From positions 124,001 through 188,000 of the IMG/VR virus record IMGVR_UViG_3300021440_000013: a stretch of 64,000 nucleotides of DNA. One strand, given 5' to 3'. The first letter of the stretch is position 1. The number at the start of each line of letters is the position of its first letter. Below are positions 13,494-54,027 of the stretch, in pieces. Position numbers and translations under genes: made by a program. Under the pieces are notes generated by a model. It saw only the letters and a list, made by a program, of their open reading frames with translations, did no database searches and was not told the DNA's origin.

Positions 13494-13750
13494 TTAAAGT
13501 ATAGATGTAGTGGAAGATCGACCAAAAATCGAAACTAGGCATTCTATCGAAAGTTAGACACGTGTAAGTTCACCCTATGGCAATAAGCCGCTTTACTTAC
13601 ATCGCATTGTTTAAACTAACGAGGATTGACCTACATGGTTGTAAGGTGGAGCCGTGTTCATAAAGTCCATCTAAAGATTCTTTTAATTAGGTGGTTGGGA
13701 AGCTCTTTTTTAGCCGCCTGTCGCTGTTTTCTCTCTCAAAGGAAGAACTC

Positions 13751-37225: not shown

Positions 37226-39367
37226 TTATTGGCGTGTTCCGTCGATAACAGACGCACCTTTAACCAACGTGTTTGCAGCACCATAAAGCGCGCCTGACAA
37301 ACCAAATGTCAGGTCGTTAATAAAGCCGTCAGTAACGGCGTTTTTAAAGACCGCTGTGTGGTACGCAGGACTGGTGCTAAATTGTTTAAACTTCAGAATC
37401 TGTTTAGTCATCCGAAGCTGTGCCATCGGCAGCGGGTAGATTTGACTATAGATATCCATGCCAGCCAATACGTTTAAATAATCGGCTGCGATGTTATCGT
37501 CGTCCATCGTCATGTCTTTACTGAACATCCCACTGATCCCGCCGCTTGACATGGGCATGTGCATGATGGTTGAAAGATCCACGATGTTAATACTCACATC
37601 CAGCGCCAGTGCTTGACCTTGCGTATCGAACGCAAGGTTAGACGTTCCGCGTGTAATGCTGATGGATTCAATCATTGCAAGCTTTGACTGAAGACGACCA
37701 CGGTCAAAGATCTGGCAATAGAACGGTGACGTATAGGATTGCTTGCCGGTTGATCGAGGGATCGATCCCGCTAAAAGCATGTAAAAAGGAATCCAGATAT
37801 TAATCAACCGAGAGACAGGGTTGTTGTAAGGGCTGATCAACTGAATTTTGTAGCTCGCTCTTGGAAGCGACGCCGAAGAGCTTTGCCAGTGCTTAGGGAT
37901 GTCCATATAGCCGGAGCCACCCAGACCTGCCACAAGGCCCGAAAAGCCCAGCGTCACCCCATCGATGGCACCCGTGACAAGGTTGGCTGCCGCGCCGACC
38001 ATGTTTTGAATTGTCTCACCAAGCACATTGCCATCGGCAAGACTAAAGCGCGCTTCTTTAAACTGCGAAGAGATCCCGTTCAGTTTCTGAGAGATTTCAG
38101 ATTCACCCACAGTGTTACCGAAGGACTCACTCATCGAGCCCGTGTGATCGACCCGAAACACAGCAAACTGAGAGCCGTCACGAAATTCCGCGTCAGCGTA
38201 TTTCTTAAGGCTGTCCATGTAACTGCCTTCGGTTTTTTGTACACCGGGTTTCTCGGAAGTCAAATCGACACGAGGATCGAGCTCTTGTTTAACTTCGTCA
38301 GACTCTTTTCTAAAGTAATCTCCTACCGTCATCATTTCGTTTAAAAACGCCATGAGGGTTGGTTCGCCTCGATTGTCACTGACCCAGCTTGTGTGGGTGC
38401 CTTCGCCCGTGTTGTCACGGCGCAGATAGCCCTCGAAGTCCGTTGCGGTCCCGTTGTTTAAGTGGGAGAAATCACTCATAAAGAGTTCGTTGGCCATGCG
38501 TTGGGCTCTGTTAGCCAACGCATACACATCGAAATAACTGGCGCCTCGGAAGATATCCGGCATCAAGGCTGAGATCTCTTCTAACTGATCTTTATCGATC
38601 TGATAGGGTTGACCCAGTCTTTGTTGATCTTCGCTTGAGAGAAACTTCTTAAAGACCCCCGTGTTTACCGCGTGGTTATTAACCAGTAGGTTCACCATTG
38701 ACCAGTACATGTGCATCGCGGGTTTAAGCGTAAAGAATTTGCTGCTCTCACGCCCCATGAGCCATCCGATCGCTTTGCCGATCGCCACACCAACCGTGAC
38801 GACCGGGAACGCTACCAGCGCCAGAACACTGCCCGCGATCTTACCGGCCGTGAACCATGCGTCGGGTGCTCGGCCCGTTCTAGCCATGATGATCTGTTCG
38901 TGATCAAAGGCTTTAAATAAAAAAGAAAGCAGCGAGTTAAACTTAGGGACACCAAAGCGTAAAAAGATGCGCTGAGAAGGATCGTCGATTCCTTCACTAT
39001 AGGCCCGACCCATCCCATAGTTGCCTGAAACGTTTGTGAGTGAAACGGCATTTCTGGCTTCACGCATATTGTTACCCACGCGACGTCCGGGCACACGGAT
39101 GTCGCTGTAGCGTGTCCATTGAGGGCGTGGGTTGATTCCGATATTGCACCCTAGGCGACCATCGGTGAATTTAGAAGAAGCACTCGACCAATAGCGGTTC
39201 TTAATATCGCTACTGATGCCGAGCTCGCCATCTGGAACCATGAACGCAACTTTCAACCAGCTTTTATCGAGCGGTTCATTGTCATCGGTGGTGTGATCCG
39301 TTGGGGCGATGGGTCGTCCGTTATACTCCATGTAGCTGGGGTCGATCTTTGTGGTGAGGCTTGCCAT
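37226..39367 (-). CDS. Tail/baseplate structural protein (phiKZ gp182-like)
   Basis: Downstream of the giant tail hydrolase; IPKHWQSSSAS and YTSPFYC...MIESISITRG motifs; SD GGAG then ATG 39367. Confidence 0.65.
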   Translation of the reverse strand: MASLTTKIDPSYMEYNGRPIAPTDHTTDDNEPLDKSWLKVAFMVPDGELGISSDIKNRYWSSASSKFTDGRLGCNIGINPRPQWTRYSDIRVPGRRVGNNMREARNAVSLTNVSGNYGMGRAYSEGIDDPSQRIFLRFGVPKFNSLLSFLFKAFDHEQIIMARTGRAPDAWFTAGKIAGSVLALVAFPVVTVGVAIGKAIGWLMGRESSKFFTLKPAMHMYWSMVNLLVNNHAVNTGVFKKFLSSEDQQRLGQPYQIDKDQLEEISALMPDIFRGASYFDVYALANRAQRMANELFMSDFSHLNNGTATDFEGYLRRDNTGEGTHTSWVSDNRGEPTLMAFLNEMMTVGDYFRKESDEVKQELDPRVDLTSEKPGVQKTEGSYMDSLKKYADAEFRDGSQFAVFRVDHTGSMSESFGNTVGESEISQKLNGISSQFKEARFSLADGNVLGETIQNMVGAAANLVTGAIDGVTLGFSGLVAGLGGSGYMDIPKHWQSSSASLPRASYKIQLISPYNNPVSRLINIWIPFYMLLAGSIPRSTGKQSYTSPFYCQIFDRGRLQSKLAMIESISITRGTSNLAFDTQGQALALDVSINIVDLSTIMHMPMSSGGISGMFSKDMTMDDDNIAADYLNVLAGMDIYSQIYPLPMAQLRMTKQILKFKQFSTSPAYHTAVFKNAVTDGFINDLTFGLSGALYGAANTLVKGASVIDGTRQ

Positions 39368-39389
39368 TCTTTTCTCCAATCATTAAAAC

Positions 39390-39427: not shown

Positions 39428-42400
39428 TTACATCGTTCTTCGCATATCAAGGGCGGATGAGCCAGACTTATCCTTGCGACCCAGGTTGATTCTGTCCTGT
39501 TCTTTCGGAGAAGCTTTTTCATCGCCTGCTTTAGCAGCCTTAGTGGTGGCACTTACAACCGTAGCCATCATCTCAGCCACCTTTTCAACCTTGACATTAC
39601 TCAGGATCTCACGCAGCACTACCAACGATTCTTGTTGGATACCAACAGATTTGTCTAGCGCTGTACTTAATGACCCAAATCCAGCGGCCATGCCTTCGCC
39701 CGACTCAGTGCGTCCGGTGCTAACGACCCCCGGTGTGCGGTTGTCTAAGAAAAGCCCAGAGCTAGAACTCTTAGGTTCTGGCGCCTTCTTTTGCCCCGCT
39801 GCGGGTCCGGCATTAGCAACCGCTGCTTTTTGAGCCGATACCTTTTCACCTGCCATCGGTGTACTGATCGGACTCTGAGCTGGATCGATATCAAGACCAG
39901 GTCCTTTACTTGGCGCCGCGGAGAGACCTAGCGAGCCAGTGGGTGCTTTGACACCGTAGCGGCTTGATTTCTCATTAAGCTTGGCGCTTAAGTTATCGTA
40001 GACCTGTTTAACGGTGAGGGGTTTACCATCTTTGTAAAAGATGTTTTGATTCTTCGAGGCCGGGCCTGGAAAACGATTCGCTGCAATCGCGTCAGGCGGC
40101 ATGGAAAGAAATGCTTTTGCGCCACTGGCCCCTAAGAAATGCGCCAGGTAAAGGTCAGTCAAATTTGGATTTGACTTGACCGGTGCGATGACTTTCTTAT
40201 TCTCCTTAATGTATTCAGCGGCCATCAAACTTGACGCTTCAACACTAAACGGAGACGCCGTCTTCTCTAAGCCATACTTAGAAGAATACTTAGAAACCAT
40301 CGAATCCCAGGTTGACCGAATGAACTGAAAGAGTCCCGCGGCGGAGCTTGTTGAAGCTTTGGCTTGGGGATTCATGTCTGATTCAACCGCAGCAAACGCC
40401 TGCATGAGAGCCGGGTCCTCACCTGCACGTTTGGCGTGCGATGCGATCTGGGCTTTGATGTCGCCACTTGCGCCATTTTCAGCGCTGGCGGTAGTTGCTT
40501 TCCCGCCGGTGGAGGCGGGTTTCTCTTCAGCGTCAGGTGGAGGAAGATCGTTGGTCGTTGAGTTAGCGGCAGCGGTATTTTGCGCCATTGACAGTTTAGC
40601 ATCTTTGGAAGGAGGCGTTCCTGCTTTGGCGTTTTGATCCGAGGCTTTCTTAACCGCAACGGCAGTATCGACCGTGTTGGTCGAAGTCGTTTCAGCTTTT
40701 ACCGCTTCGCTAAATTTAGGCGGAGGGAGCACCTGATCTTTTGCGGTTTGCTGTAGATTAGACGCTACGGGCGAGGGCGGGGCATTGAGTAGACCCAGTG
40801 CAACGTCTTTGTTACGCCGACCCTTTGCGCTGTTAGCCATGCTACCGTATCCGGCGCCACCACGCATGACACCCGCGCTGATCATGGCGTCTCGCAACTG
40901 ACCATTAGTTTTCGCTTCCGAAGGGTTCTTTTGGATCCCTGCGGGCTCTACGTGCCAAGGTTCTTGCCCCACGGGTCTGGTGAAACCATACTTCTTCATC
41001 AAGCCCAGTTTGTCAAGCTCGTCAGCGATCTTTGAATCGATGTCGAGCGCTAAACCAAACTCATGAAGCGAGTTGCCTGGCGCCGCAGCTCTATCGCCAT
41101 ACTTACGCTTCATCTCGACTTGTTCTTCGTAGGTGCGTACACCCGAAGTGACAAGGATGCTCTTGCCTGTATTCTTTCCATACTCCTCAGCCATCCCTAA
41201 GAAGAGCTTGAGCATGGTTGGATTAAGGCTATCGATGTTGATACCCTTTTTCTCAAACTTAACGAACTGGCGACCTGCTGTACCCTCCAAGGGTGCGCCT
41301 GGCGCCATCGCGACTTTACCCGCTCCGCCTACAAGACTCTTTTCTTCACTGCCTTGCTCGCGCGCTGTGGTGCTGGCTGGTGCCGCACCACCATCTTCAC
41401 TCTGGGTGGCCGTCTGTACCTGGGCTTTATTCTGCTCAGCGTTCTTACGGCGCTCCTCTTCGACCTTCGCTTTTTGAGCTTGGTCGATCTGACTCTCTTT
41501 TTCTTTGTCTTTAAAGACGCCGAAGGTGAGTTTGTCAAAGAGCGTTTTAGCAACCGATGTCGCGGTTGTTTCACCGAGCTTTGCAGGAGGCAGCGTTGCT
41601 TTGGTGTCTTTCGGTTTATCCGCTTTCGCCTTAGCGATCAACGCTTCGATGCTGTCCTTGACAAACTTGTTGTCCAAAGAGAGCTGGCTTAATGCTTTAA
41701 CCGGAGAGGTGTCTTCATCATAGGGGCCACTTTCAAAACCAACGAGTTCGAGATACTTGATCCGATCGTCCGGTTTAAACTTAGCCACCTCTTTGAGCTT
41801 GGCTTTGTTATTGACCGCATAGAGCGCGGTCATGTGTGTCAAGAAGAATGGCTTAAAGCGTTTATCGAACCAACGGCTAAACTTCTCGCCTTGCTCAGTA
41901 TCTTCCTTGTCAATCTTAAAGAGCTCAAGGAGTTCTTCAGATTTGACTTTCTTATCATTGATATAGGCTTTACCGTTATCGTAACCGACACGCCCATCTT
42001 CAAGATACGCTTCCAACATGAACGGGTAGTAGTTATACTGATCCACGCTCTGATTGTAACCAAAGCCATATTGGTTTAAGCGGATGCGTTCAAACTCATC
42101 CGCGTTGTTACGCGTCGCGTATTGGTAGAGTTTATAAAGTCCATAGCCGGCACCTGCTATCGCTGCCGCACCTAAAATCACTGGGCTGCTGATCACGGAA
42201 GCAACGGCCCCTATTGCACCACCGGCTACGTTTAACGCACCCATGGCAAGGCCAGGTAGGGCGCGTGTCAACGCAAAGCGCCCTAGTCCTAATGCACCCT
42301 TGCCGGCAAGCTTAGCGGCACCCCACGCGCCTTTACCAGCAAGCTTGGCTACGCCTCCCACTCCCTTAACCAGTGCACCTGGCGTCATCGCGAGAAGTTT

Positions 42401-45400
42401 ACCCGCTAAACCCATCACGCCGCCAAGACCTTTAGTGATCAAGGAGAAGAGTCCACCAAAGCCCGTCATCGCCATTTTGAGGCCATTTCCAAGCAAATCC
42501 ATCAGTCCTGTACCGCCCTTATAGCGTGCGGTCAGATCTGCTTGAGCGCCTTCTTTTTGGCGAGATGCTTTGAGTTCAGCTAACTTTTCTTCACGCTCTT
42601 CAATACTTCCGTCACGTGTACCACTTCCATCGGTGTCGTTCCAAGCACGCTTGGCCGAATCGATCTTTTGCTTAACACGTTTAAGAAGAGAAGGTTTCTT
42701 TTCAACTTGAGGTTGATTTTCGGGTGTGGCTGCCGCAGCACCTTTTTCTCCACCCTTTAAAAACCCGCCAATACTACTTGCAAGTCCACCCGCCATAGCG
42801 GCACCGGTCCCTAATAGACCGCGTGCCTTACCCTGCGCTAACTTAAAGCGACTTGGTTTGGCAGGACCCATCTGGTCTGGAAGTCTAGGCCCCACGAAAT
42901 CACCTGGACTCTGAGCCTTAGGGGTCGACCAACTCGGTTGCTTGAATCGATCCTTGGCAGCTTGAATCATCGCATCGATACGGTCCTGATACGTCTCGTT
43001 GGGTTGTAAGTCCGATATCCCTCTGTCAATCGCATCTTTTTGTCGAGCACCGGGATATATCGGTCCAACAAACTCATCTGGTCTCTGGGTCTTGGTAGCG
43101 GTGTGTTTTGTTTTTAGCGCGCTGTACTGGTATTTGGCTTTATTGAACAAGCCTTTCTTTTTGTCACCCGGCTGCATCGGACCCACAAAGTCTTCCGGTG
43201 TTCTACCCAAAAGCTTGTCTCCGAGTTCGCGTCCCTTGCCTTTTAGGTCAGTGAAGTTTTCTTTATTCTTAAAGAAATCCATTCCACGAGAGAGAAGTGA
43301 GCCTGAGCTTGTTCCGATTGCAGCAGTGCTGACTCCAGGCTGCATCGGACCCACAAAGTCCTTTGCGACCTCTTCACTGACAGCACCACCTTTACCAAAA
43401 CCAAAGAAACCCTTGATCTTGTTCTTGAGCTCTGCGGTCTTTTCTTTGATCTCAGCCGACTTGATGGCTACTTCGTCCTTAGCTTCCTTTAAAACCTCGT
43501 TCAGGTTCTTAGGCGCTTTGTCGACAGGACCGCCAGGCGGCGTTACCTTGAGCTTGGCAGATTCACGCTTCTTAATGCGTTTTAACACATTCACACGCTG
43601 GTTAAGCATGATGTCGCGGATATCGAGCAAGACCTCGTAAGTATCCTTGGCGTATTTATTTTCACCAAAGTTGATACCAAACTGACCCCAGTCGGTGGGT
43701 TGATCCCACCACTCTTTGATCTTTCCACCCATTGAGAGCGACTTATCGGTCAGGACATTAAATCCTTTTCTAGCTTTATCTCCTACCCACGCAGCCGCCT
43801 TGGTCGCTAGACGGATGACGTTGGTGACGTTTCCACGGATCTTATCACCATAGCGATCATAGAGACCCTTGGAGCGTTCTTCAAGACTCAGGATGATGTT
43901 ACCCACCGAGTCAACGATATCGCCCTTAGCCTTATTGAGCTTATCCATCGTGTCAAGCACTTCGCCCGTGACCGCGTCACGATAAAAACCCGCCTTGAGT
44001 TTAACGGCACGAATAACGGGTTCTACGCCATCAGGCAAGTACAGGTCTTTGGCTTCATTAAGCTTATCCCCAACCCAACCAAAGACTTTACTCACCTTGT
44101 CTTTGATGAACTTTAAACCATTGGGAAGTCCTTCGGTTAGAAAAGACTTCGCGCTATCGAAGACGGTGCTTGAAAAAGATGCTGCTTTTTCATAGAGCGT
44201 GCTAAACGCTTTACGCGTACCGCTCTCTTTATCGGTGAGTTGGTCTTTAAGAAAGTCTTTTGCTGAGGTGAAAAGACCCTTGGCTTTCTCGGTTTTCTCA
44301 CCCGGTGTAAAGAATTCTTTAAGCGCCTCGATTGTGCTTGAACCGGCTTTAAATCCTAGGTCCATCGTGCCGCGCATGATCGAAGTAATCATGCCGCGGA
44401 AAGTGCCATCGTGAACAAGTTGGTTTGGAATAAAGCCACCCGCACCCTGGCCACCGCTTTGCACAAGCTCACTGGCCAGCTTTTGCTGTTCGGTAAGCAG
44501 CTTTACCGTGTCAGCGGTATCTTTTTGGATCTTAGCGAGGAGCTCGTTGGTGAGCTCCTCTGCGCTCTTACCCTTGGTACGGTGACGTGAAGAGCTCTTG
44601 GGTGTGGTTTCCGGCGGTGCGGCGTCACGTTTAAAAAGACCTTCGACCTTCTCACCCAAATGTTGAATGGAAGCCATCAAGGCGCCATTCATACTTTGCA
44701 GATCGATCATCTTGCCCTTTGGTGCAACCTCTTCACCTAGGTTCTTACGCACCTCCTGAGCCATGGGTCCTGAGTGCTCTTGATCATCGCCCTTACCCGC
44801 CTGATAGTTCCAGTTAAAGAGCTTGGTCTTTTTAATACCTTCGTAGGCTTCCCTTGGATTAAAACGCTTAACCTTGTCAAAGAAACCCTCTTCTTTGTCG
44901 GGTTTAGACTTCTGTCCAAAGTAGCGTGCCGCCAAGTCTTTATAATCCTGACTCCCAGGCGCACCCTTAAAGCGATCACTGACCGCCTGGAGGAGTTCTT
45001 TTGGGTTAAGCTCTTTGATCGCTTCTTTAACGTTGATGTCCGAACGAATAAAGGCGCTGTCTTCCATGAACTTGGCGTAAGCTTCTTCATCGATGTCGTA
45101 CTTGCCGTCATCACGCTTTTTCGCTAAACCTTTCTTAGCGATTAGATCGCCATAGCCCGCCTTTTCAAACCCAGCGATGGTTTTATCAGACGAAGGTGTC
45201 CTCTTACGGATGTCCTTGATGGCTTTAGTCAGTGTGTTAGCATCGCGGTTTTTAGTATCGCTTTGCTCGCTTGAGCGAAGCTTATATTCAATTAAGTCTT
45301 GGAGTTCATCTGAGAGCTGTCCGAACGAAGGGGACGAGAGGATCGAATCAGGATCAAGTGGGTTATTACTATCCCGACTCAGCCTTGATAAGAATCGTTT

Positions 45401-47038
45401 AAGCTCGATGATTTGGTCTTCGTCGAGGTTTTCATTTTCGGTAAAGAGTTCGACGGCTTTTTCGACTATGTAGTTATAGCCGGATCTCTGGATATGGGAG
45501 GCAAGGTCTTTTTCAACCCGCGCCCCCATGTCCGTTTCACTGGTGAATTCCTTACGCTTAAAATCGTATACCTGCCGGTCGGCTTGATTTCGCCCGGTTC
45601 TTAACATGACGATTTCGCGGTGAATGTTCGCCAGGTGCCCAGGGATAATGTCGGTTAGACTGATGTGTGCTTTGGCATCAAAACCCATCGTAGGGTTATC
45701 GAGCTCATCGAGATTCGTCTCAGAACCAATACTTCGACCCGGATCCCTGTCCGTGAAGTTATCCATGAGCATGTCAAGGGCACGGAAGAACTTACCCTTA
45801 GCACCAACCTCGTTGGTTTTGTCAACCCAGTTTTGAGACTGCCTTAGTTTCTCGATAGCGCCTGCTGGGTTGTTAGCAATATTGGCAAGGCCGGCAAACT
45901 TCTCCTGGATGACCGAGTCATCACCACCGATCTGTTTGATCCGTTTAGCCATCACGTCGCGAAACCATTCCGCGATGTTGGCACCCGCCGTTGCGCCAAG
46001 CATCTCGGCTTTTGACATGGGTTCCATACCCATGTCAACCATCGATGCGTTCATTCCATCCAGCATCTCTTTAGCGTCAATGGCGCTGTCAAGCTGCATG
46101 TCGGCCGTATCGAGCGCCGAAGTAAAGCCAGAAACTGTCTGACGCGCAGTTTCTTTAAGGCGGTCCATACCTTTTTTCAGGAAGGACTTATCGCCATAGA
46201 GCGACTCAATAAACTTTTTCTTACTGACTTCTTTAAAGCGCTCGCTTTCGGTGATCTTTACGTACTCTGGCATCGCGGTGTTTTTAACCACCGCTTCCAG
46301 TTGCGTTTGGAAAACTTTGAAACTGGCCTGAGCTTTTGAGAAGTGTTCTTTTTGTGCAAGCAGCGAACGAATCTGAAGTTCAAGCGACTTGCGTTGAAAG
46401 CGCTGGTTGGTGTTAACCGTATATTGCGTCTGAATGGAGAGGCTACGCTCCATCGAGCGTTGCAGATCGAAGTTGGCATTAAAGCGCTTAGCACCGATGC
46501 GGTCTCGAATCAGGTCTTTGGCGTTATCGAGCTTACCTTGTTCTTGCTGCTGCTCAAAGACCCCTGCAAGCGACATCGCTACCGCTTGTTCTTCTTGGTT
46601 AGGGACTGTGTTCTGCTCACCACCGATGTCTATGCCACCCCAGCGTGCGATTTTCTCAGTCAGGCTTTTAAGGCGCTTAGCACTCTCTGGAACAAGCTGG
46701 TTAATCTTGGCGGTAACACGCCCGACACGGGGCTTTATTTCTCTTACCGTCTCATCGTATAGTTCGTACATCCCGGTGGTGAGCTCACCGGTTGCATCTG
46801 CCACTTCCCCGTAGCTATCAGGGAGCGTTTTGCGAAGGGTGTCCTTTACAAACTCTGGGCTAACCACCGCGTCTTTAACGCCAGACACGGTACCCATAAA
46901 GACGTTGCCAATGACACCACGCGCTTTTTTCTTACCCGTGGCTTCCTGATTAAGCTCGCCATCAATTTCATTCTCGAAGTCGAAATTAAAATCTGTATCA
47001 AACTCCGGAATATCCGAAACCAGCTCCTTCTTGGCCAT
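39428..47038 (-). CDS. Giant tail-associated peptidoglycan hydrolase / tape-measure-like protein (phiKZ gp181-like) with S74-like, M15-peptidase and SLT domains
   Basis: SLT: AAVES..NP...SSAAGLFQF...W, YLAHFLG. M15: TSGVRT..EQ...APGNSLHEFGLALDI...EPWHVE. S74-like: SDINVKE...GPMAQEV. SD GGAGG then ATG 47038. Confidence 0.85.
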   Translation of the reverse strand: MAKKELVSDIPEFDTDFNFDFENEIDGELNQEATGKKKARGVIGNVFMGTVSGVKDAVVSPEFVKDTLRKTLPDSYGEVADATGELTTGMYELYDETVREIKPRVGRVTAKINQLVPESAKRLKSLTEKIARWGGIDIGGEQNTVPNQEEQAVAMSLAGVFEQQQEQGKLDNAKDLIRDRIGAKRFNANFDLQRSMERSLSIQTQYTVNTNQRFQRKSLELQIRSLLAQKEHFSKAQASFKVFQTQLEAVVKNTAMPEYVKITESERFKEVSKKKFIESLYGDKSFLKKGMDRLKETARQTVSGFTSALDTADMQLDSAIDAKEMLDGMNASMVDMGMEPMSKAEMLGATAGANIAEWFRDVMAKRIKQIGGDDSVIQEKFAGLANIANNPAGAIEKLRQSQNWVDKTNEVGAKGKFFRALDMLMDNFTDRDPGRSIGSETNLDELDNPTMGFDAKAHISLTDIIPGHLANIHREIVMLRTGRNQADRQVYDFKRKEFTSETDMGARVEKDLASHIQRSGYNYIVEKAVELFTENENLDEDQIIELKRFLSRLSRDSNNPLDPDSILSSPSFGQLSDELQDLIEYKLRSSEQSDTKNRDANTLTKAIKDIRKRTPSSDKTIAGFEKAGYGDLIAKKGLAKKRDDGKYDIDEEAYAKFMEDSAFIRSDINVKEAIKELNPKELLQAVSDRFKGAPGSQDYKDLAARYFGQKSKPDKEEGFFDKVKRFNPREAYEGIKKTKLFNWNYQAGKGDDQEHSGPMAQEVRKNLGEEVAPKGKMIDLQSMNGALMASIQHLGEKVEGLFKRDAAPPETTPKSSSRHRTKGKSAEELTNELLAKIQKDTADTVKLLTEQQKLASELVQSGGQGAGGFIPNQLVHDGTFRGMITSIMRGTMDLGFKAGSSTIEALKEFFTPGEKTEKAKGLFTSAKDFLKDQLTDKESGTRKAFSTLYEKAASFSSTVFDSAKSFLTEGLPNGLKFIKDKVSKVFGWVGDKLNEAKDLYLPDGVEPVIRAVKLKAGFYRDAVTGEVLDTMDKLNKAKGDIVDSVGNIILSLEERSKGLYDRYGDKIRGNVTNVIRLATKAAAWVGDKARKGFNVLTDKSLSMGGKIKEWWDQPTDWGQFGINFGENKYAKDTYEVLLDIRDIMLNQRVNVLKRIKKRESAKLKVTPPGGPVDKAPKNLNEVLKEAKDEVAIKSAEIKEKTAELKNKIKGFFGFGKGGAVSEEVAKDFVGPMQPGVSTAAIGTSSGSLLSRGMDFFKNKENFTDLKGKGRELGDKLLGRTPEDFVGPMQPGDKKKGLFNKAKYQYSALKTKHTATKTQRPDEFVGPIYPGARQKDAIDRGISDLQPNETYQDRIDAMIQAAKDRFKQPSWSTPKAQSPGDFVGPRLPDQMGPAKPSRFKLAQGKARGLLGTGAAMAGGLASSIGGFLKGGEKGAAAATPENQPQVEKKPSLLKRVKQKIDSAKRAWNDTDGSGTRDGSIEEREEKLAELKASRQKEGAQADLTARYKGGTGLMDLLGNGLKMAMTGFGGLFSLITKGLGGVMGLAGKLLAMTPGALVKGVGGVAKLAGKGAWGAAKLAGKGALGLGRFALTRALPGLAMGALNVAGGAIGAVASVISSPVILGAAAIAGAGYGLYKLYQYATRNNADEFERIRLNQYGFGYNQSVDQYNYYPFMLEAYLEDGRVGYDNGKAYINDKKVKSEELLELFKIDKEDTEQGEKFSRWFDKRFKPFFLTHMTALYAVNNKAKLKEVAKFKPDDRIKYLELVGFESGPYDEDTSPVKALSQLSLDNKFVKDSIEALIAKAKADKPKDTKATLPPAKLGETTATSVAKTLFDKLTFGVFKDKEKESQIDQAQKAKVEEERRKNAEQNKAQVQTATQSEDGGAAPASTTAREQGSEEKSLVGGAGKVAMAPGAPLEGTAGRQFVKFEKKGINIDSLNPTMLKLFLGMAEEYGKNTGKSILVTSGVRTYEEQVEMKRKYGDRAAAPGNSLHEFGLALDIDSKIADELDKLGLMKKYGFTRPVGQEPWHVEPAGIQKNPSEAKTNGQLRDAMISAGVMRGGAGYGSMANSAKGRRNKDVALGLLNAPPSPVASNLQQTAKDQVLPPPKFSEAVKAETTSTNTVDTAVAVKKASDQNAKAGTPPSKDAKLSMAQNTAAANSTTNDLPPPDAEEKPASTGGKATTASAENGASGDIKAQIASHAKRAGEDPALMQAFAAVESDMNPQAKASTSSAAGLFQFIRSTWDSMVSKYSSKYGLEKTASPFSVEASSLMAAEYIKENKKVIAPVKSNPNLTDLYLAHFLGASGAKAFLSMPPDAIAANRFPGPASKNQNIFYKDGKPLTVKQVYDNLSAKLNEKSSRYGVKAPTGSLGLSAAPSKGPGLDIDPAQSPISTPMAGEKVSAQKAAVANAGPAAGQKKAPEPKSSSSGLFLDNRTPGVVSTGRTESGEGMAAGFGSLSTALDKSVGIQQESLVVLREILSNVKVEKVAEMMATVVSATTKAAKAGDEKASPKEQDRINLGRKDKSGSSALDMRRTM

Positions 47039-47089
47039 TTTTAGATAGCCTCCCATAATGTAAAGTTTAGCATCCAAAGGATCTTCGCT

Positions 47090-49116
47090 ATGAACCTTTT
47101 AGATACGGTCCCATTTAACCTGAGTCTTCTAATTCTCACGCCCGAGAATACACGTGGACTTGGGCAAGTCAAAGTGCTCGATGTTTTCTCAGCGGCCAGT
47201 AAGAACTTTCACAGTGACGGTCTTTTTAGTATCGAGACCTTTGGTAAGGTAGGGGGTGAACGCCGTAGCCGCCTCTATGGTTACATTAACCTTAATGTGC
47301 CAATCTTTCACCCTGTGCTCTATAAGAGCTTGATTGGGCTAAAGGAGCTCTACGCGCAGATCATGGCGGGTTCTGCCTACGCCAAATTTGATCCAGTAAC
47401 AAAAGACTTTGAAGCAGCCTCAATCACCGACGGTGAAACAGGCTACGCGTTCTTTGTCAGGCATTTCCAAGCGCTTCAGTTTGAGGAGCGTAAAAGTACG
47501 TCGCGTGAGTTCGCGATCAAGCTCATTAATAAATACCGCGATAAGGCTTTTATTGATAAACTCATTGTGCTTCCTGCTGGATTACGTGACTACACGATCC
47601 AGCCCAACGGTAAGCCTGAGGAAGATGAGATCAATACCCTGTATCGCAAGGTGCTCTCCAATGCTACGGTCATTGGGACTCAGTCAAAGAGCGATCTGAC
47701 CCATATTGACTCAACCCGTTATGGGCTTCAGAATGCGGTACAGGAGGTCTTTAGTTACATCGTGAACTTGCTTGAGGGGAAGGGTAAGTTGATCCAAGGC
47801 TGGTGGACTAACCGAAACGTTCACAACAGCACACGCAATGTGATCACAGCGATCGTCCCCAAGTCTAATGAACTGGGGGACGAACACACCATTTCCCCAA
47901 ACCACACCGTCGTGGGGATCTATCAGCAGATTCGTGCGATTTTTCCGATCTCGATCAATCTGATCCGTGAGATGGCGGGTATGGTTTTTTCAGGTCCTAA
48001 TAACCCAGCGCGGCTAATCGATCCAAAAACACTTCTAGGTGAGACGGTCTCGATTGATCCGGTTCATTTTGATGAGTGGATGACCCAGGAAGGGATCGAG
48101 TCCATTTTAAACCGTTTTGAGATCGAGGCGCTTCGACACGACGAAGTTAAGGTGGGTGGACATTACTTCGCTCTGCTTTACAATGACGGTAAACGCGTCA
48201 AACTCTTTCACGGCTTGCAAGAGCTGCCAGATGGGTTTGACAAGGCATTCGTTAAACCGGTTAGCTATGCAGAGCTGTTCTACTTAGCGGTCTATAAACG
48301 TGTCAGGGAGATCCCTGCGTTTGTGACACGTTACCCCGTGATCGGCTATGGTGGTATCTACCCAAGCTTCGTCTATATGAAAACGACCACGCACAGTCAA
48401 TCTTTGCGTGTTTTAGATGACGCGTGGCAAGAAAGTGGCGATGTCGCTAATGAGTTCCCAATTCGCGGTGTACCTTTCGTTAATTCACTGAGTGTCTCCG
48501 GAGCCCACTTAGGCCGGCTCGGGGCTGATTGACAACGAGTGTAATAATTGATGCTAGAGTTTAGCATCTCGTTGTTTGTCCGATTTTGTAGAAATGCAAA
48601 ATTGATCCTCCTTTAACTGCTGGAACCCACTAAAGCTGTGTCACCACATGCGTCACGAAAGTAGACGTAGACGGTTTAAAAACGACATGGATGATCCGAT
48701 TGACTCGGTGAAATGGGGAACCGTGGAGTGAAACACTCCCTTTAGCAGCCAAGCTCCTAAGGCGTAAGCTATGGAGAAGGTTCAACGATCAGCCCTTAAG
48801 CAAGGGGTAGGCTCAAGCGAGCCGAAACGGGGAGCACCTGACCGGTTGATGCCGAAGGTGAAGATATGATCTGTTCTGCATGCAAAACATGCAGCGTATG
48901 CGGGTAATGCTGCGGGGAGAAGGGTAGCGTCTTTTCTTGAACAACAAGTTCGACGGGGATGTCATGTCGTTTGTACCGGTGATGACCGATGAGTCTATCG
49001 CAGAAGTTACGAAACTCTTGGCCAGTCGCGACTACTATGTGGGTGTCGATGGCAAGATGGTATTTAGCTCTTCTAACGATGTCTCTGAGTTGGTTTTCTC
49101 AGAGATGACCAGTTAA
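47090..49116 (+). CDS. Virion RNA polymerase beta' subunit (phiKZ gp180-like); spliced join(47090..48529,48949..49116), 535 aa
   Basis: DGLFSIETFG, LPAGLR, LEGKGKLIQ, TRYP motifs. Catalytic LGAD|FDGD is restored by removing the intron. Exon 2 = FDGDVMSFVPVMTDESIAEV...EMTS*. Confidence 0.9.
48530..48948 (+). ncRNA. Group I self-splicing intron (419 nt, no homing endonuclease ORF)
   Basis: 5' exon ends in U and intron ends in G. P AACTGCTGGAAC (48615), Q TAGCAGCCAAG (48743), R GTTCAACGATCA (48780), S AAGATATGATCT (48861). P2 with GAAA loop, P9 hairpin, P9.0 TGTTC/GAACA. Confidence 0.92.
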
Positions 49117-49665: not shown

Positions 49666-52600
49666 ATGAAACCTATTTTTAAGGTACTTTATCGGGCAGA
49701 GGGTATTCGCTACAGCGATCGGCTTTTGAACCTCCCGCAGTATAAGCTGACGCAGTTTCCACGAGGGTCTCTTTTTCACAGCGTCGATTACACGCATCTA
49801 CACCCAGACGTAGAGGCTGCTCAGCCCTATTTCACGGGTTATAGCAAGAAGATCTTGGTTGATCATCTTACGCACTATGAGGCTCTTAAAGGCCCCGCTC
49901 GCCAAATCACCTTCAACATCAATCAAGCCACACGGACGTGGCGTCAAAGCCACCGTGCTCTCTGGAGTGAGCTTGAAGCGCCGTATCGTACAGAGCAAAA
50001 TCCTGACGCACTCATTGTCGTAAACTACGGTTATCTGGACAAAGCCCACATTTACCAAAAGGTGCAGTTGGCAGAATATTACCGCTGGTACAATCTCTTT
50101 GATACGCTTTACCGAAAAGTCAACGAGATCGCCGCCGTAAGTGATCGTCATCAGTTCTTGTTTTATCCTTTGCCAAAACTATTACAAGGCCGGGCAATCC
50201 TTCAGAAGTTTGAAAAAGAAGGCGAAGGCTCAATTCGAACGGTGTCGTTCTTTGGCCAAGGTGGAGATGCCAGTTATCTCTTTTTGGACCTTTGGAAATG
50301 GTTAGGTGTTAAGCACCGCGCTAATAGCCTTTTATCACATATCTATCCGAAACATTACGCCAAAGTCAACTTGATCTTCCAGGGTAGTTCAGGTAATCAA
50401 GTTTGGATTAACTTGGGGTATCTGAACAGTTGGATCAAGGGTCAAGAAAACGCAACCGAATTTAACAGTGTCACGCAGTTTGATGCGGAGTTGATCCAAA
50501 AACTCTACCTTCGAATGGCGATGAGTTTGAACTCGGTGGTGACTGAGCCTGAAGTGCTGCCCGATGAAGCGGTTGAAATCAACCAAAGTGTCCCTGTGCC
50601 GAAGGTTTCTGAAGAACCTTCGGCAGGTAGCGTTGACGAAACCAGTCTTGACACCGAGAGCGCGGCGCTTCCCAGTGACGAAGAAGAGAACCCCAACGCA
50701 GGACAATCACTCCTTCGAGTCAACCTTAAAGCAGGCGCTAAAACCGAGGTGGCGGCGCTGGATAAAAAGAGCGATGAGCTTCCCGTTGAGGACCTCACCA
50801 AACTCATGCTCGATGAGCTTGAAAAAGACATGGAGGCACTGGATCGCATCAGTCTTGTTCACCTTAAGAATAGTGGTGAAAAAATGGATGCGACAGGCGG
50901 TCCGGCGGTTGAAATCACGCTGGATAGCCGTAGTGTAAGAGAAGAAGTTTATAAGACACTGAGCGCTGAAGAAGCGCTTAAGAGCCGTATCCGTGAAGAC
51001 GCTGAGGCGAATCTCATTACCGCTTCGGATTACCGTAAGTATGAAGAGGCGATCAAAGCGTACCAAGAAAGCCCTGATCCTTACGGTGGAAAAGAGCCGC
51101 GCATTAAAGCGATGGTGATTAAACCCGAAGAACTCATCATCACTCCCGAAGAAAGTAAGATCGTCTTGACGAGCGCAACGCCTGACACCACAATGGGTGA
51201 AAGCACGCTGAAGACGTTCGATAAGAAATACATTCGAACGGTTCACCGTAAGGACATCTTACAAGCGATCGACGCGATCCAAGGAACCGGTGTGGTGATC
51301 CGTAACCACGAGGTGGAAATCCGGCATAGCGTCCTAGGTGTGTATGAGCACCACCGACTTGAAATCAAACCGATCGATGGTGCGCCGTCCACGCTTCAGT
51401 TTACGCTTCCTGTGGTCGAGGAGGACGGCACCTTTACAGCAGGAGGAAACAAATACCTTCTGCGTCGTCAACGGGTCGACAACGTTATTCGTAAGATCGC
51501 GCCTCAGATCGTCTCGCTCTCGACCTATTACGGTAAGACGTTTATTCAAACGTCGCCTAAGATGTCAAGCAGCAGTCTAGTCTGGCTCTTTAGACAGATT
51601 AACCTACAGGCGCTCTCGGGTGAAGGCCTTATCAGAGACGTTAACCCAGGCAATGCGTTTGATAACGATTACACCGCACCGTACATCTATAACGCACTTG
51701 CCAGTGAGTTTGAATCGATGAGCGTCGGAGACATTAAGCTCATCTTCGATCACAAAGCCGCAAGGAAGCTTCTTAACGAAGGCCAAGGGTATCCGCGATC
51801 TTTGTTTGCAGATGGGGCTGTGTTTTGCGGTGTGGACAGCAAGGGGAATTATATCCGGGTTGACCGCGATAATCACTTTCAGCGCTTTAGTGACAAAGGG
51901 GTGGAGGAGCTCGGTGATTTTGCCAGCTTGGCTAAGCTGGATGTCGAAAAAGCACCGATCGATTTTGCTGAGATGCGGGTGTTTTCCAAGTATGTGCCTG
52001 TGGGGCTCATCCTTGGCTACTATGTGGGCTTTAAACGCCTTATCGCGCTTCTGGACGAGCCGTACCGTGTGGTTGAGGGGCGTAAGAATAAAGGCTTGGC
52101 GCCTAACGAATACGCGGTAAGTTTCCAGGATGTGAGCTACATCTTTAAAACGACAGACCGCGTTAGCACACTGATCCTCTCAGGCTTTATGGAGTATGAA
52201 AAGATCATCAAGATGTTTGAGGCTAAGGAGTTTGACCATAAAGAAGTCTATCTCAACGTCTTAATGGCGAAGAAGATGAGTGCCATCTATGTGCGTGAGC
52301 TCGACATGATGGAGTCGGCCTTTATTGATCCGATTAGTCGTGAGATCTTGGCTGAGATGAAAGAGCCGACCAGCTTTATTCCGCTGCTGGTAAGAGCCGT
52401 AGAACTCCTCACTACGTTTGAACACCCTGCATCGCAAGACCGCTCTGCTATGCGTGACCGGGGCTATGAGCGTTTTGCAGGCACGATCTACAAAGAACTG
52501 ACCCAGGCGGTTCGGCAGTTTAGGAATAAGAATCTCGTAGGGCGCTCTAAGGTCGATATGAGTCCGTTCCAGATCTGGAACGCCTTAATGAAGGACAATT

Positions 52601-54027
52601 CCTTAAAGATCGTTGAGGACACCAACCCGATCCAGAGTTTAAAAGAACAGGAGGTCATCACCTTTACCGGCACAGGAGGTCGTAATAAAGACACGATGAC
52701 CAAAGAGACGCGCGCGTATCACCCGAACGATGTGGGTATTCTGTCTGAGTCGACTGTCGACAGCACCTCTGTGGGGACCATCGCGTACCTCTCTGCAAAC
52801 CCGAACATCAAAAATGTTCGGGGTATCGCAAAAGATGAGAAGGTCTTTAACCCGACGACGATCCTCTCAACCAGCGCACTTTTATCACCCGCCGCAATGA
52901 ACGACAATCCCAAGCGTGTTATGTTTATCACCACGCAGCATTCGCATACGATCGGCTCAAGTGGCTATAAGCAACCTCGACTCCGAACAGGGTATGAGTT
53001 TGTGATTGGGAAACGGACTCCGAAGCTCTTCTCTAGCGCGGCTGAAGAAGACGGTGTTGTGCTGAGTATTGCGGAAAAAGGCATGGTGGTGCGTTATGCC
53101 TCAGGTAAAGAAGTAGGTCTTGAATTAGGTCGACTTCACGGTAAAGCAGAAGGAACGGTGTACCCTCATGATCTCGTCACCTCTTTAGCAGTCGGTGCTA
53201 AGTTTAAAGCAGGCGATATTCTTAGCTATAACACCAAGTTCTTTGAGCCTGATTTTATAAACCCCAAAGAAGTGGTGCTAAAAGTGAACGATGTCGTCAG
53301 AACCGCGTTCATGGAAAACAACTTAACACATGAAGACTCGTGCTCGATTTCTCAGAGCCTGGGTAAGCGTTTTGAAACCGAGGTGATGAAGGTTAAGTCA
53401 TACGTGGTGAAGTTCCAACAAAACCTTCTCGAAGTCATTAAGCTGGGTGCTCGGGTAGACCCAAAGACCGTCTTGATGATCATTGAGGATGAGATCACCG
53501 CGAACACCGGTGCGTTTAGCGAAGACAGCTTAGCGACACTTAAACGCCTTTCAAATGCTGCGCCTAAGGCTGGCGTGATGGGTATCGTTGAAAAGATCGA
53601 AGTGTTCTATCATGGCGACAAACGTGACATGACGGCGTCGATCAAAAAGCTCGCCGATAAATCCGATCAAGACATGGCTCAAGCGGCTAAGAGTGTCGGT
53701 AAGCCCGTTGTTTCGGGGCGTGTTACCGACGAATATCGCGTGGCGGGTTCTCCGCTTGAACTCGATTACGCTGAAGTGAAAATCTACATCTCCGTTAAAG
53801 CGGGTACGGGCGTAGGTGATAAAGCGGTCTTTGGTCATCAGATGAAGTCGACGATCGCCGAAGTGATGGCCGAACCGATCCATACCGAAGCGGGTGAGAT
53901 CGTAGAGGCGACGTTTGGTTACCGCTCTGTGGCTAACCGCGGTGTTCTCTCTCCTTCAATCATTGGCACCACCATCACGCTTCTGGATGTGGTGGGTAAG
54001 AAAGCGGTTGAGCTTTACGAAGCATAA
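49666..54027 (+). CDS. Virion RNA polymerase beta subunit, large fragment (phiKZ gp178-like)
   Basis: 1453 aa; TFTGTGGR, LSESTVDS..VG, HEDS, GVGDK...HQMKST beta motifs. Confidence 0.9.
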   Translation: MKPIFKVLYRAEGIRYSDRLLNLPQYKLTQFPRGSLFHSVDYTHLHPDVEAAQPYFTGYSKKILVDHLTHYEALKGPARQITFNINQATRTWRQSHRALWSELEAPYRTEQNPDALIVVNYGYLDKAHIYQKVQLAEYYRWYNLFDTLYRKVNEIAAVSDRHQFLFYPLPKLLQGRAILQKFEKEGEGSIRTVSFFGQGGDASYLFLDLWKWLGVKHRANSLLSHIYPKHYAKVNLIFQGSSGNQVWINLGYLNSWIKGQENATEFNSVTQFDAELIQKLYLRMAMSLNSVVTEPEVLPDEAVEINQSVPVPKVSEEPSAGSVDETSLDTESAALPSDEEENPNAGQSLLRVNLKAGAKTEVAALDKKSDELPVEDLTKLMLDELEKDMEALDRISLVHLKNSGEKMDATGGPAVEITLDSRSVREEVYKTLSAEEALKSRIREDAEANLITASDYRKYEEAIKAYQESPDPYGGKEPRIKAMVIKPEELIITPEESKIVLTSATPDTTMGESTLKTFDKKYIRTVHRKDILQAIDAIQGTGVVIRNHEVEIRHSVLGVYEHHRLEIKPIDGAPSTLQFTLPVVEEDGTFTAGGNKYLLRRQRVDNVIRKIAPQIVSLSTYYGKTFIQTSPKMSSSSLVWLFRQINLQALSGEGLIRDVNPGNAFDNDYTAPYIYNALASEFESMSVGDIKLIFDHKAARKLLNEGQGYPRSLFADGAVFCGVDSKGNYIRVDRDNHFQRFSDKGVEELGDFASLAKLDVEKAPIDFAEMRVFSKYVPVGLILGYYVGFKRLIALLDEPYRVVEGRKNKGLAPNEYAVSFQDVSYIFKTTDRVSTLILSGFMEYEKIIKMFEAKEFDHKEVYLNVLMAKKMSAIYVRELDMMESAFIDPISREILAEMKEPTSFIPLLVRAVELLTTFEHPASQDRSAMRDRGYERFAGTIYKELTQAVRQFRNKNLVGRSKVDMSPFQIWNALMKDNSLKIVEDTNPIQSLKEQEVITFTGTGGRNKDTMTKETRAYHPNDVGILSESTVDSTSVGTIAYLSANPNIKNVRGIAKDEKVFNPTTILSTSALLSPAAMNDNPKRVMFITTQHSHTIGSSGYKQPRLRTGYEFVIGKRTPKLFSSAAEEDGVVLSIAEKGMVVRYASGKEVGLELGRLHGKAEGTVYPHDLVTSLAVGAKFKAGDILSYNTKFFEPDFINPKEVVLKVNDVVRTAFMENNLTHEDSCSISQSLGKRFETEVMKVKSYVVKFQQNLLEVIKLGARVDPKTVLMIIEDEITANTGAFSEDSLATLKRLSNAAPKAGVMGIVEKIEVFYHGDKRDMTASIKKLADKSDQDMAQAAKSVGKPVVSGRVTDEYRVAGSPLELDYAEVKIYISVKAGTGVGDKAVFGHQMKSTIAEVMAEPIHTEAGEIVEATFGYRSVANRGVLSPSIIGTTITLLDVVGKKAVELYEA

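What the first reader, a model, noticed from the sequence alone, without database searches (positions are those of the whole stretch)
44640..45043. Internal peptidase S74-like autocleavage domain buried in the giant tail hydrolase
Seen: about 670 residues into the ~2,540-aa protein lies FIR-SDINVKEAIKEL...KLFNWNY...SGPMAQEV...IDLQSMNGALMASIQHLGEKVE. Established: this matches the intramolecular chaperone/autoprocessing (S74) signature SDxxxK..I...Y.Y...G..AQEV...L...I..L, whose Ser-Lys dyad cleaves immediately before the Ser upon trimerisation. In phages the domain is normally C-terminal on tailspikes and fibres. Here it is internal, carries a ~45-aa insertion that includes a partial duplication (KELNPKELLQAV vs KRFNPREAYEGI), and is followed by ~1,700 more residues including both muralytic domains. 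Inference: the protein may be a self-processing polyprotein that releases an N-terminal ~670-aa piece from the hydrolase-bearing part once trimerised, conceptually like MYRF.
Basis: partly seen in the sequence, partly recalled or inferred. Interest (0 to 1): 0.78.

Follow-up and report, generated by a model that had tools for sequence, protein, structure and literature searches.

The report
Self-cleaving S74 domain inside giant tail protein
A 2,536-residue tail protein of an uncultured phiKZ-like jumbo phage carries, about a quarter of the way along, a real and strongly conserved copy of the self-cutting "chaperone" domain that normally sits at the very end of phage tail fibres, so the protein probably cuts itself in two once it has formed a trimer.

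Summary
Residues 666-805 of the giant protein (window 44624-45043, minus strand) are a Peptidase_S74 / intramolecular-chaperone (ICA) domain.

- Pfam scores it above its cut-off.
- A family profile finds the solved S74 domains, including MYRF and GA-1.
- A confident AlphaFold model has the four solved ICA structures as its four best fold matches among 48,161 PDB chains.
- Ser666 and Lys671 lie in an SDxxxK motif that is present in 135 of 136 giant relatives. These relatives were picked with a profile that does not include the motif.
- The normal spacing from Ser to the G-x-x-AQ core is 42 residues. Here it is 91, because of a 49-residue, poorly modelled insertion flanked by two copies of the first helix.

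The gene is the positional orthologue of phiKZ gp181 and SPN3US gp239, a tail lysin and likely tape measure. Five cultured orthologues lack the domain, so it marks a large uncultured clade.

The most likely mechanism is trimer-dependent self-cleavage between Arg665 and Ser666. This would give a 74.7 kDa N-terminal piece and a 200.6 kDa piece that carries both wall-degrading domains. Cleavage itself is inferred, not shown. I found no published description of this arrangement.

The parts
39428..47038 (-). Giant gene, 2,536 aa plus stop. Positional orthologue of phiKZ gp181 / SPN3US gp239 (tail lysin, likely tape measure).
   Evidence: ORF and start codon with GGGAGG upstream. PHROG 3201, E 7e-188. 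Homology to the PA7 and SPN3US orthologues. Conserved flanking genes.
45044..47038 (-). N-terminal module, aa 1-665: the presumed 'client', released as a 74.7 kDa fragment. Residues 1-47 are disordered, about 42-350 form long helices, and 360-665 form a confident helical globular domain.
   Evidence: AlphaFold model with alignment A2. Aligns with PA7 residues 42-667. Fragment mass. No fold match beyond coiled coils.
45041..45046 (-). Predicted scissile bond Arg665 | Ser666. Ser666 is the predicted nucleophile.
   Evidence: The profile alignment places Ser666 on residue 1 of the cleaved GA-1 domain (3gud) and on the mutated catalytic position of MYRF (7dc3). Invariant in relatives.
45026..45028 (-). 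Lys671, predicted general base of the Ser-Lys dyad.
   Evidence: SDxxxK is present in 135 of 136 giants chosen with a core-only profile. It is equivalent to K592 of MYRF and K916 of endoNF (PMC8326128).
44624..45043 (-). Complete S74 / ICA domain, aa 666-805, including the insertion.
   Evidence: Pfam PF13884. PDB profile hits 8jov, 7dc3, 3gud, 6f45. Model pLDDT 83.8. Top four fold matches are all ICA structures. BFVD hits are named S74 proteins.
44978..45019 (-). First copy of the helix, aa 674-687, directly after the SDxxxKxxI strand.
   Evidence: Scores 13.2 bits against the canonical-helix matrix, second best in the protein. Modelled as a helix with pLDDT about 90.
44873..44977 (-). Variable linker of the insertion, aa 688-722.
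   Evidence: Length varies from 0 to about 80 aa among relatives. pLDDT 63-76.
44831..44872 (-). Second copy of the helix, aa 723-736, in the canonical register before the beta-hairpin.
   Evidence: Scores 18.3 bits, the best 14-mer in the protein. The Pfam alignment starts here, at profile position 12-13.
44624..44830 (-). Conserved core, aa 737-805: hairpin with Trp743/Tyr745, the GPMAQEV helix and the C-terminal long helix.
   Evidence: W743, Y745, G757, M759, A760 and Q761 are invariant or at least 90% conserved. Y615/Y617 of MYRF line the cleavage site. Helix 780-805 in the model.
42869..43360 (-). Four [D/E]FVGPxxP motifs, aa 1227-1390. Role unknown.
   Evidence: Four copies against 0.09 expected by shuffling; absent from that region in the closest relatives.
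42125..42463 (-). Gly/Ala-rich hydrophobic region, aa 1526-1638, possibly membrane-inserting.
   Evidence: Kyte-Doolittle 19-residue windows up to 2.03; 41% Gly+Ala.
40925..41236 (-). M15 / VanY-like peptidase region, aa 1935-2038.
   Evidence: PHROG 13118 endolysin, E 6.7e-14. Pfam VanY scores 17.1 bits, below its cut-off of 25. NCBIfam match is weak.
39977..40441 (-). SLT lytic transglycosylase domain, aa 2200-2354.
   Evidence: Pfam SLT 34.3 bits. phiKZ gp144 endolysin structures 3bkh and 9xps, E 1.7e-30.
47090..48532 (+). Divergently transcribed virion RNA polymerase beta-subunit gene, used as a synteny anchor.
   Evidence: PHROG 2986, E 1.6e-161. 50% identical to the equivalent neighbour in S74-bearing relatives and 40% to PA7.
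37226..39379 (-). Downstream 717-aa gp182-like structural gene, used as a synteny anchor.
   Evidence: PHROG 3181, E 1.1e-166. 49-53% identical to the neighbour in relatives L009 and L010, 35% to PA7.

Best explanation
Residues 666-805 are a functional S74 / intramolecular-chaperone auto-processing domain. It sits at the junction between the conserved N-terminal module (aa 1-665) and the rest of a gp181-type giant tail protein. When three copies of the protein come together, the three ICA domains form their trimer, helped by the long C-terminal helix 780-805. This positions Ser666 next to Lys671 in a pocket lined by Trp743 and Tyr745. The chain is then cut between Arg665 and Ser666. The products are a trimeric 74.7 kDa N-terminal fragment and a trimeric 200.6 kDa fragment that begins with SDINVK. 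The larger fragment keeps the ICA domain and carries the hydrophobic Gly/Ala-rich segment, the M15-like peptidase and the SLT transglycosylase. The domain would therefore work both as a trimerisation and quality-control device and as a built-in protease that turns one gene product into two virion proteins in a fixed 1:1 ratio. The 49-residue insertion is a tolerated, lineage-specific loop created by duplication of the first helix. Shown here: domain identity, fold, conservation of the catalytic residues, internal position, and orthology to gp181/gp239. Inferred: trimerisation, the cut itself, its timing, and the fate of the two fragments.
For: - Pfam PF13884 scores above its gathering cut-off (25.3 and 33.2 bits against 22). 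All 125 aligned relatives also match it.
- The family profile finds solved S74 domains: 8jov 4.5e-6, MYRF 7dc3 3.3e-5, GA-1 3gud 1.1e-3. Ser666 aligns to the known cleavage serine.
- The AlphaFold model has pLDDT 83.8.
- A Foldseek-independent search of 48,161 PDB chains ranks 7dc3, 3gw6, 4uw8 and 3gud first to fourth (Z 6.3-5.1). The next hit scores 3.5.
- BFVD top hits are named S74/ICA proteins.
- In a non-circular test, 135 of 136 giants found with a core-only profile have SDxxxK upstream. The one exception is an N-truncated fragment.
- W743 and Y745 are at least 90% conserved. They correspond to MYRF Y615/Y617, whose mutation blocks cleavage.
- The motif is kept whether the spacer is canonical or up to about 80 aa longer.
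- PA7 gp181 aligns up to residue 638 and again from 968, so the domain sits at a module boundary.
- Orthologues are tail proteins regarded as tape measures. Tape measures are trimeric in well-studied phages (my own knowledge), which suits a trimer-dependent protease.
Against: - No experimental or proteomic data exist for any S74-bearing member, and no cultured phage with it was found.
- Foldseek against the PDB found nothing, and the fold Z-scores are only middling.
- The insertion lies between the catalytic strand and the core and could slow or prevent cleavage.
- Cultured orthologues work without the domain, so cleavage is not essential to the gp181 function as such.
- Known ICA clients are triple beta-helices, whereas the segment upstream here is modelled as helical.
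- No natural variant was found with the two halves encoded as separate genes.
Confidence: 0.6

Rival explanations
1. The domain folds and trimerises but no longer cuts. It serves only as a trimerisation and folding nucleus inside an uncleaved 275 kDa protein.
For: The 49-aa insertion separates the catalytic strand from the core. Orthologues without any S74 domain function as single chains. The upstream client is helical, unlike classical clients.
Against: Ser, Asp and Lys of SDxxxK are kept in 135 of 136 giants across sequences only 22-40% identical. The aromatic pair near the scissile bond is kept too. A purely structural role would not need these residues. Relatives with the canonical 42-residue spacing keep the same motif.
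Confidence: 0.2
2. The domain is catalytically competent but cleavage is gated. The insertion loop, or packing inside the tail, holds it off until a later step such as tail completion or ejection into the periplasm. This would resemble the way partner proteins and the juxtamembrane region delay MYRF cleavage.
For: The insertion is variable, poorly ordered and placed next to the catalytic strand. Insertion-bearing proteins form a well-supported clade of 46 representatives, so the loop has been kept for a long time. Regulated MYRF cleavage is documented (title and abstract of PMC12803276).
Against: The insertion is not conserved in sequence or length, and about half of the giants lack it. That argues against a specific regulatory element. 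No partner protein is known.
Confidence: 0.12
3. The resemblance to S74 is a chance match in a low-complexity, charged region.
For: The whole-protein Pfam score is only 3 bits above the cut-off. A single-sequence search of the PDB found nothing relevant. Foldseek against the PDB was negative.
Against: The domain-only Pfam E-value is 6.6e-8, and 125 of 125 relatives match. The profile hits four solved S74 proteins. The four top fold matches are all ICA domains. phmmer finds 439 relatives.
Confidence: 0.01

Closest known systems
C-terminal intramolecular chaperone domains (Peptidase S74) of phage tailspikes and fibres: K1F endosialidase (3GW6), GA-1 neck appendage (3GUD), T5 L-shaped fibre pb1 (4UW8)
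   Same: The SDxxxK Ser-Lys motif, the aromatic hairpin, the G-x-x-AQ helix and the C-terminal helix. Pfam membership and fold.
   Different: There the domain ends the protein and is discarded after cleavage. Here about 1,730 residues follow it, including two wall-degrading domains, so it would stay on the larger product. This copy has a 49-aa insertion with a duplicated helix. The upstream client is modelled as helical, not as a triple beta-helix.
MYRF ICA domain (7DC3), eukaryotic membrane-tethered transcription factor
   Same: An internal position. The N-terminal part would be released as a trimer while the ICA stays with the C-terminal part, which contains a hydrophobic segment. It is the best structural match (Z 6.3) and the second-best profile match.
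   Different: No NDT80-type DNA-binding domain or other MYRF region was detected. The hydrophobic region lies about 720 residues after the ICA rather than directly after it. This is a virion protein. It works like MYRF but is not a member of that family.
phiKZ gp181 / SPN3US gp239 family (giant tail-associated lysin, likely tape measure)
   Same: The same position between the vRNAP beta gene and the gp182-like gene. Homologous N-terminal module, hydrophobic region and SLT domain. gp239 was assigned to the tail by virion mass spectrometry, and orf181 is essential.
   Different: The cultured members examined (PA7, RSF1, Eowyn, pVa-21, SPN3US) have no S74 domain. No giant with one was found in 50,697 phage records.
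Small (about 250-470 aa) virion proteins of roughly 60-kb phages with a C-terminal S74 domain (e.g. Achromobacter phage CF418P1, Erwinia phage Pavtok, Ochrobactrum phage POI1126)
   Same: The closest S74 sequences outside the giants, with the canonical 42-residue spacing.
   Different: The arrangement is the classical C-terminal one. The rest of the protein is unrelated to the gp181 N-terminal module.
Proteolytic processing of tape measure proteins (lambda gpH to H*, T5 pb2); from my own knowledge, not tested here
   Same: A tape-measure-type protein is matured by cleavage during tail assembly.
   Different: Those cuts are near the C-terminus, and none is attributed to a built-in S74 domain.

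Membership tests
[quoted passage not shown] | Match to the curated family profile (Pfam PF13884) above its gathering score | tested here: met
   25.3 bits on the whole protein and 33.2 bits on the excised domain, against a cut-off of 22. 28.5 bits in the six-frame genome scan.
[quoted passage not shown] | Catalytic Ser-Lys dyad in an S-x4-K (SDxxxK) motif at the N-terminal edge of the domain | tested here: met
   Ser666 and Lys671. The motif is present in 135 of 136 giants selected without using it. It aligns to the cleavage serine of 3gud and 7dc3.
[quoted passage not shown] | Aromatic residues of the hairpin that line the cleavage site (Y615/Y617 in MYRF) | tested here: met
   W743 and Y745 are at least 90% conserved. 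They align with the MYRF Y-x-Y. Their role in MYRF is described in PMC8326128.
[quoted passage not shown] | Fold shared with solved ICA domains | tested here: met
   VIA-align over 48,161 chains ranks 7dc3, 3gw6, 4uw8 and 3gud first to fourth, Z 6.3-5.1, with the next hit at 3.5. BFVD hits are S74 proteins. Foldseek against the PDB found none, so support is moderate.
[quoted passage not shown] | Homotrimer formation | not testable with these tools
   Only monomer prediction was available.
[quoted passage not shown] | Autocatalytic cleavage immediately before the serine | not testable with these tools
   Needs protein chemistry or virion mass spectrometry. No cultured S74-bearing relative was found.
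Classical phage arrangement of S74 (C-terminal, released and discarded chaperone) | The domain ends the polypeptide | tested here: not met
   1,731 residues follow residue 805. The same internal position, about residue 650-850, is seen in more than 130 giants.
phiKZ gp181 / SPN3US gp239 orthologous group | Conserved genomic position and homologous N-terminal module plus C-terminal SLT domain | tested here: met
   Flanking vRNAP beta and gp182-like genes. BLASTP to PA7 (E 1e-21 and 1e-28) and to SPN3US gp239. PHROG 3201, E 7e-188.
Tail tape measure proteins | Match to a tape-measure profile, or length proportional to tail length | tested here: inconclusive
   No Pfam tape-measure family matched, and the Atlas lead was weak (0.79). 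Long helices and a Gly/Ala-rich hydrophobic segment are consistent with the role. The assignment rests on the literature for orthologues. Tail length is unknown.
MYRF family | NDT80-type DNA-binding domain upstream of the ICA domain | tested here: not met
   No such Pfam match. The N-terminal module has no fold match beyond coiled coils.

The most novel reading that the evidence does not exclude
The gp181-type giants of this uncultured clade are self-splitting tail/ejection polyproteins. The ICA domain senses trimer formation and then divides one chain into two separately acting virion proteins. Their layout (client, ICA domain, then a hydrophobic segment further downstream) would be the viral prototype from which the MYRF type of membrane-tethered, self-releasing factor was derived.
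Probability: 0.08. Interest if true: 0.85.

Novelty: new variant of a known kind. Interest (0 to 1): 0.62.

Why it matters
S74/ICA domains are known in phages as disposable C-terminal folding caps of fibres and spikes. The one well-studied internal case is eukaryotic MYRF.

This work shows an internal ICA domain with an intact catalytic apparatus in more than 130 sequence clusters of 2,000-3,600-residue tail proteins. If it cuts, it would be a built-in, assembly-dependent protease in a tape-measure-type protein. It would also be a way to make two tail or ejection proteins in a fixed ratio from one gene.

The result gives a concrete, cheaply testable prediction: a neo-N-terminus SDINVK and fragments of 74.7 and 200.6 kDa. 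It divides the gp181 family into S74-bearing and S74-free branches for comparative work on how jumbo-phage tails are built and emptied. It also provides a viral counterpart to the MYRF layout.

Tried and rejected
- **Single-sequence search of the PDB with the segment:** only chance hits. A family profile was needed.
- **Foldseek of the domain model against the PDB:** no S74 hit. The Foldseek-independent search and BFVD did find them.
- **Megablast and tblastn against 50,697 phage records:** no near relative, and no giant carrying the domain.
- **P0086 as phiKZ gp181:** I first suspected this because both are 2,237 aa. It has no match in the phage collection and comes from a metagenome contig, so I rejected the idea.
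- **Natural 'split-gene' variants ending at the S74 domain:** the shorter hits are contig-truncated fragments or unrelated proteins.
- **Unbiased survey of IMG/VR with an N-module alignment:** the alignment was too diverse for the tool.
- **ESM Atlas and fold searches of the N-terminal module:** only coiled-coil-like matches and one weak tape-measure lead.
- **Tree of the N-terminal module:** it clusters the insertion-bearing proteins. It does not place the S74-free proteins cleanly (long branches), so gain versus loss is undecided.
- **Literature searches for S74 in gp181, tape measure proteins or Chimalliviridae:** no report found.
- **A second giant ORF in the genome as an alternative tape measure:** rejected, because it is a beta-propeller-like repeat protein.
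Full report
**Where it is**

The window is bases 124001-188000 of a 216,876-bp IMG/VR virus record with 127-bp terminal repeats. The record comes from JGI metagenome 3300022744.

The finding lies in a minus-strand ORF at 39428-47077. The likely start is the ATG at 47038, eight bases after a GGGAGG. This gives 2,536 aa, identical to database protein P0001.

The end coordinate, 44640, falls at residue 800. All quoted motifs are present.

**What kind of phage and gene**

The neighbouring genes are:
- two virion RNA polymerase beta-subunit genes (47090-48532 and 49666-54027);
- a head maturation protease (56587-57354);
- a 717-aa structural gene immediately downstream of the giant gene.

This is the phiKZ-type arrangement. 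The same order is seen in Pseudomonas phage PA7 (a Phikzvirus) and in Salmonella phage SPN3US around gp239. The flanking proteins are homologous.

The giant protein aligns with PA7 gp181 over residues 34-638, again from about residue 968, over the hydrophobic region, and over the SLT domain. It aligns similarly with SPN3US gp239. It is therefore the positional orthologue of gp181/gp239.

For these orthologues the literature gives the following:
- gp181 is a structural peptidoglycan hydrolase (Briers et al. 2008, as summarised in PMC5380687).
- gp239 is tail-associated by mass spectrometry of tailless particles and is called the tape measure (PMC10052503).

**Is it an S74 domain?**

Yes. Five lines of evidence agree.
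- Pfam PF13884 scores 25.3 bits on the whole protein and 33.2 bits (E 6.6e-8) on residues 641-827. The gathering score is 22.
- A phmmer search of 1.84 billion representative proteins with residues 647-822 gave 439 hits.
- I aligned 125 of these hits (A1), and every one matches PF13884.
- The A1 profile finds solved S74 proteins by sequence:
  - a tail fibre, 8jov (4.5e-6);
  - the MYRF ICA domain, 7dc3 (3.3e-5);
  - the GA-1 neck appendage chaperone, 3gud (1.1e-3);
  - more weakly, the S16 long tail fibre, 6f45.
- In these alignments Ser666 falls on residue 1 of the cleaved GA-1 domain and on the mutated catalytic position of MYRF.

**The fold**

An AlphaFold model of residues 641-827 has mean pLDDT 83.8 and pTM 0.68.

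Foldseek against the PDB found nothing. That is not surprising for a monomer model of an intertwined trimer that also carries an extra loop. A search that does not depend on Foldseek covered 48,161 PDB chains. Its first four hits were:

| Rank | Entry | Protein | Z |
|---|---|---|---|
| 1 | 7dc3 | MYRF ICA | 6.3 |
| 2 | 3gw6 | endosialidase chaperone | 5.9 |
| 3 | 4uw8 | T5 L-shaped fibre | 5.4 |
| 4 | 3gud | GA-1 | 5.1 |
| 5 | next hit | unrelated | 3.5 |

Foldseek against predicted viral structures returned mostly proteins named Peptidase S74, intramolecular chaperone, or tail fibre.

**Is the catalytic machinery kept?**

To avoid circularity I built a profile of the core only, from the hairpin to the C-terminal helix, without the SDxxxK strand. 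I then looked upstream of each hit.

Of 136 proteins longer than 1,400 aa with a core hit, 135 have SDxxxK within 130 residues upstream. The exception is an N-terminally truncated fragment. By my own estimate from typical residue frequencies, about 3% would be expected by chance.

Trp743 and Tyr745 are at least 90% conserved. They align with MYRF Tyr615 and Tyr617, which line the cutting site and whose double mutation abolishes correct cleavage (PMC8326128).

The sequences concerned are only 22-73% identical over the first 800 residues. This is purifying selection on residues that matter for catalysis and not only for folding.

**The insertion and the duplication**

In the small C-terminal S74 proteins and in about half of the giants, the serine lies exactly 42 residues before the G-x-x-AQ motif. 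In the window protein the distance is 91, and in its relatives it ranges from 58 to 121.

The extra 49 residues lie after the SDxxxKxxI strand. I built a scoring matrix for the canonical first helix from 59 canonical sequences. Its two best matches in the entire protein are:
- residues 723-736 (18.3 bits), in the canonical register;
- residues 674-687 (13.2 bits), right after the strand.

The background is -23 ± 7.6, and the best unrelated match scores 10.0.

The stretch between the copies varies in length and sequence and is modelled with low confidence (pLDDT 63-76).

In a tree of the N-terminal module, the window protein lies in a well-supported group of 46 representatives, all with an insertion.

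**Distribution**

The domain sits at about residue 650-850 in more than 130 representative clusters of proteins of 2,000-3,600 aa. Two distant members, P0086 and P0095, have the same flanking genes as the window.

Five cultured orthologues lack the domain: PA7, RSF1, Eowyn, pVa-21 and SPN3US. tblastn of the domain region from two different giants against 50,697 phage records found only small proteins of about 60-kb phages, in which the domain is C-terminal.

The internal S74 domain therefore marks a large, so far uncultured branch of the gp181 family. I cannot say whether it was gained once or lost repeatedly.

**The rest of the protein**

- A model of residues 1-814 shows a disordered N-terminus and long helices between about 42 and 350, including one of 80 residues. 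Residues 360-665 form a confident helical globular domain that runs straight into the ICA domain. It has no informative fold match.
- Four [D/E]FVGPxxP motifs lie at residues 1227-1390.
- A Gly/Ala-rich hydrophobic region spans residues 1526-1638.
- An M15/VanY-like region follows.
- An SLT domain resembles the phiKZ endolysin gp144.

**Mechanism**

From what is established for S74 domains, trimerisation activates a Ser-Lys dyad that cuts just before the serine (PMC8326128; Bd3182 S782A in PMC10769870).

The most likely course here is that three chains associate, the ICA domains trimerise, and each chain is cut between Arg665 and Ser666. This yields 74.7 and 200.6 kDa products.

In contrast with tail fibres, the ICA domain would remain on the larger, functional product, as it does in MYRF. 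I put the probability that cleavage occurs at about 0.6. The main alternative is a non-cutting trimerisation module (about 0.2). A gated cut is a further possibility (about 0.12).

One open difficulty concerns space. The trimeric beta-helix tip of a related S74 fibre is about 40 Å across (PMC10769870), so an ICA trimer is likely of similar width. Together with a 300-residue globular domain per chain, it may not fit inside a tail tube. These parts may instead sit at one end of the tail. Uncoupling them from the part that is expelled could then be the purpose of the cut. This last idea is speculation.

**Novelty**

I found no paper describing an S74 domain in gp181, in a tape measure protein or in chimalliviruses. 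A jumbo-phage survey mentions S74 only for fibre and spike assembly (PMC7824862).

This is a new variant of a known kind: a familiar domain and chemistry, in a new position and in a new type of host protein.

Noticed in passing
window 42869-43360 (minus strand; aa 1227-1390 of the giant protein): Four copies of a short motif [D/E]FVGPxxP, about 40-57 residues apart; 0.09 copies are expected by shuffling. The closest relatives (65-75% identical in the N-terminal part) have none in this region. The same motif occurs inside the S74 insertion of 6 of 69 insertion-bearing relatives. It looks like a mobile short linear motif of unknown role.
   Followed up: partly
genome G000:C1:59870-67393 (+), outside the window: A second giant ORF of 2,507 aa, made of repeats that look like FG-GAP / beta-propeller blades. 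It is unrelated to the gp181-like protein and may be a fibre or adhesin.
   Followed up: partly
window about 43850-44150 (aa about 968-1057 of the giant protein) and L003 (PA7 gp181 aa 916-1117): The stretch after the S74 domain aligns with two adjacent parts of PA7 gp181. PA7 therefore carries a tandem repeat of a roughly 100-residue module (LKAGxY...TG...) that is present once in this stretch of the window protein.
   Followed up: no
L007 (Klebsiella phage Eowyn, NC_070650.1 200328-200537, minus strand): Eowyn has an S74 match in a different 1,211-aa open frame, probably a fibre, while its gp181 orthologue has none.
   Followed up: no
window 13691-15034 (+) and 13736-15025 (-): Two long ORFs of 447 and 429 aa overlap almost completely on opposite strands. 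At most one is likely to be a gene.
   Followed up: no
window 57829-58950 (+): A 373-aa protein just after the head protease matches many PHROGs annotated variously as tail fibre, head decoration or virion structural protein. This suggests a widely shared Ig-like or decoration module.
   Followed up: no
L002 (Achromobacter phage CF418P1, OQ817832.1 8822-16876): In this 58-kb phage, the small protein with the C-terminal S74 domain lies two genes upstream of a 2,684-aa ORF annotated 'putative portal'. That is far too long for a portal and is probably a giant internal or ejection protein. I compared only the first 1,396 residues of that ORF with the window protein and found no similarity.
   Followed up: partly
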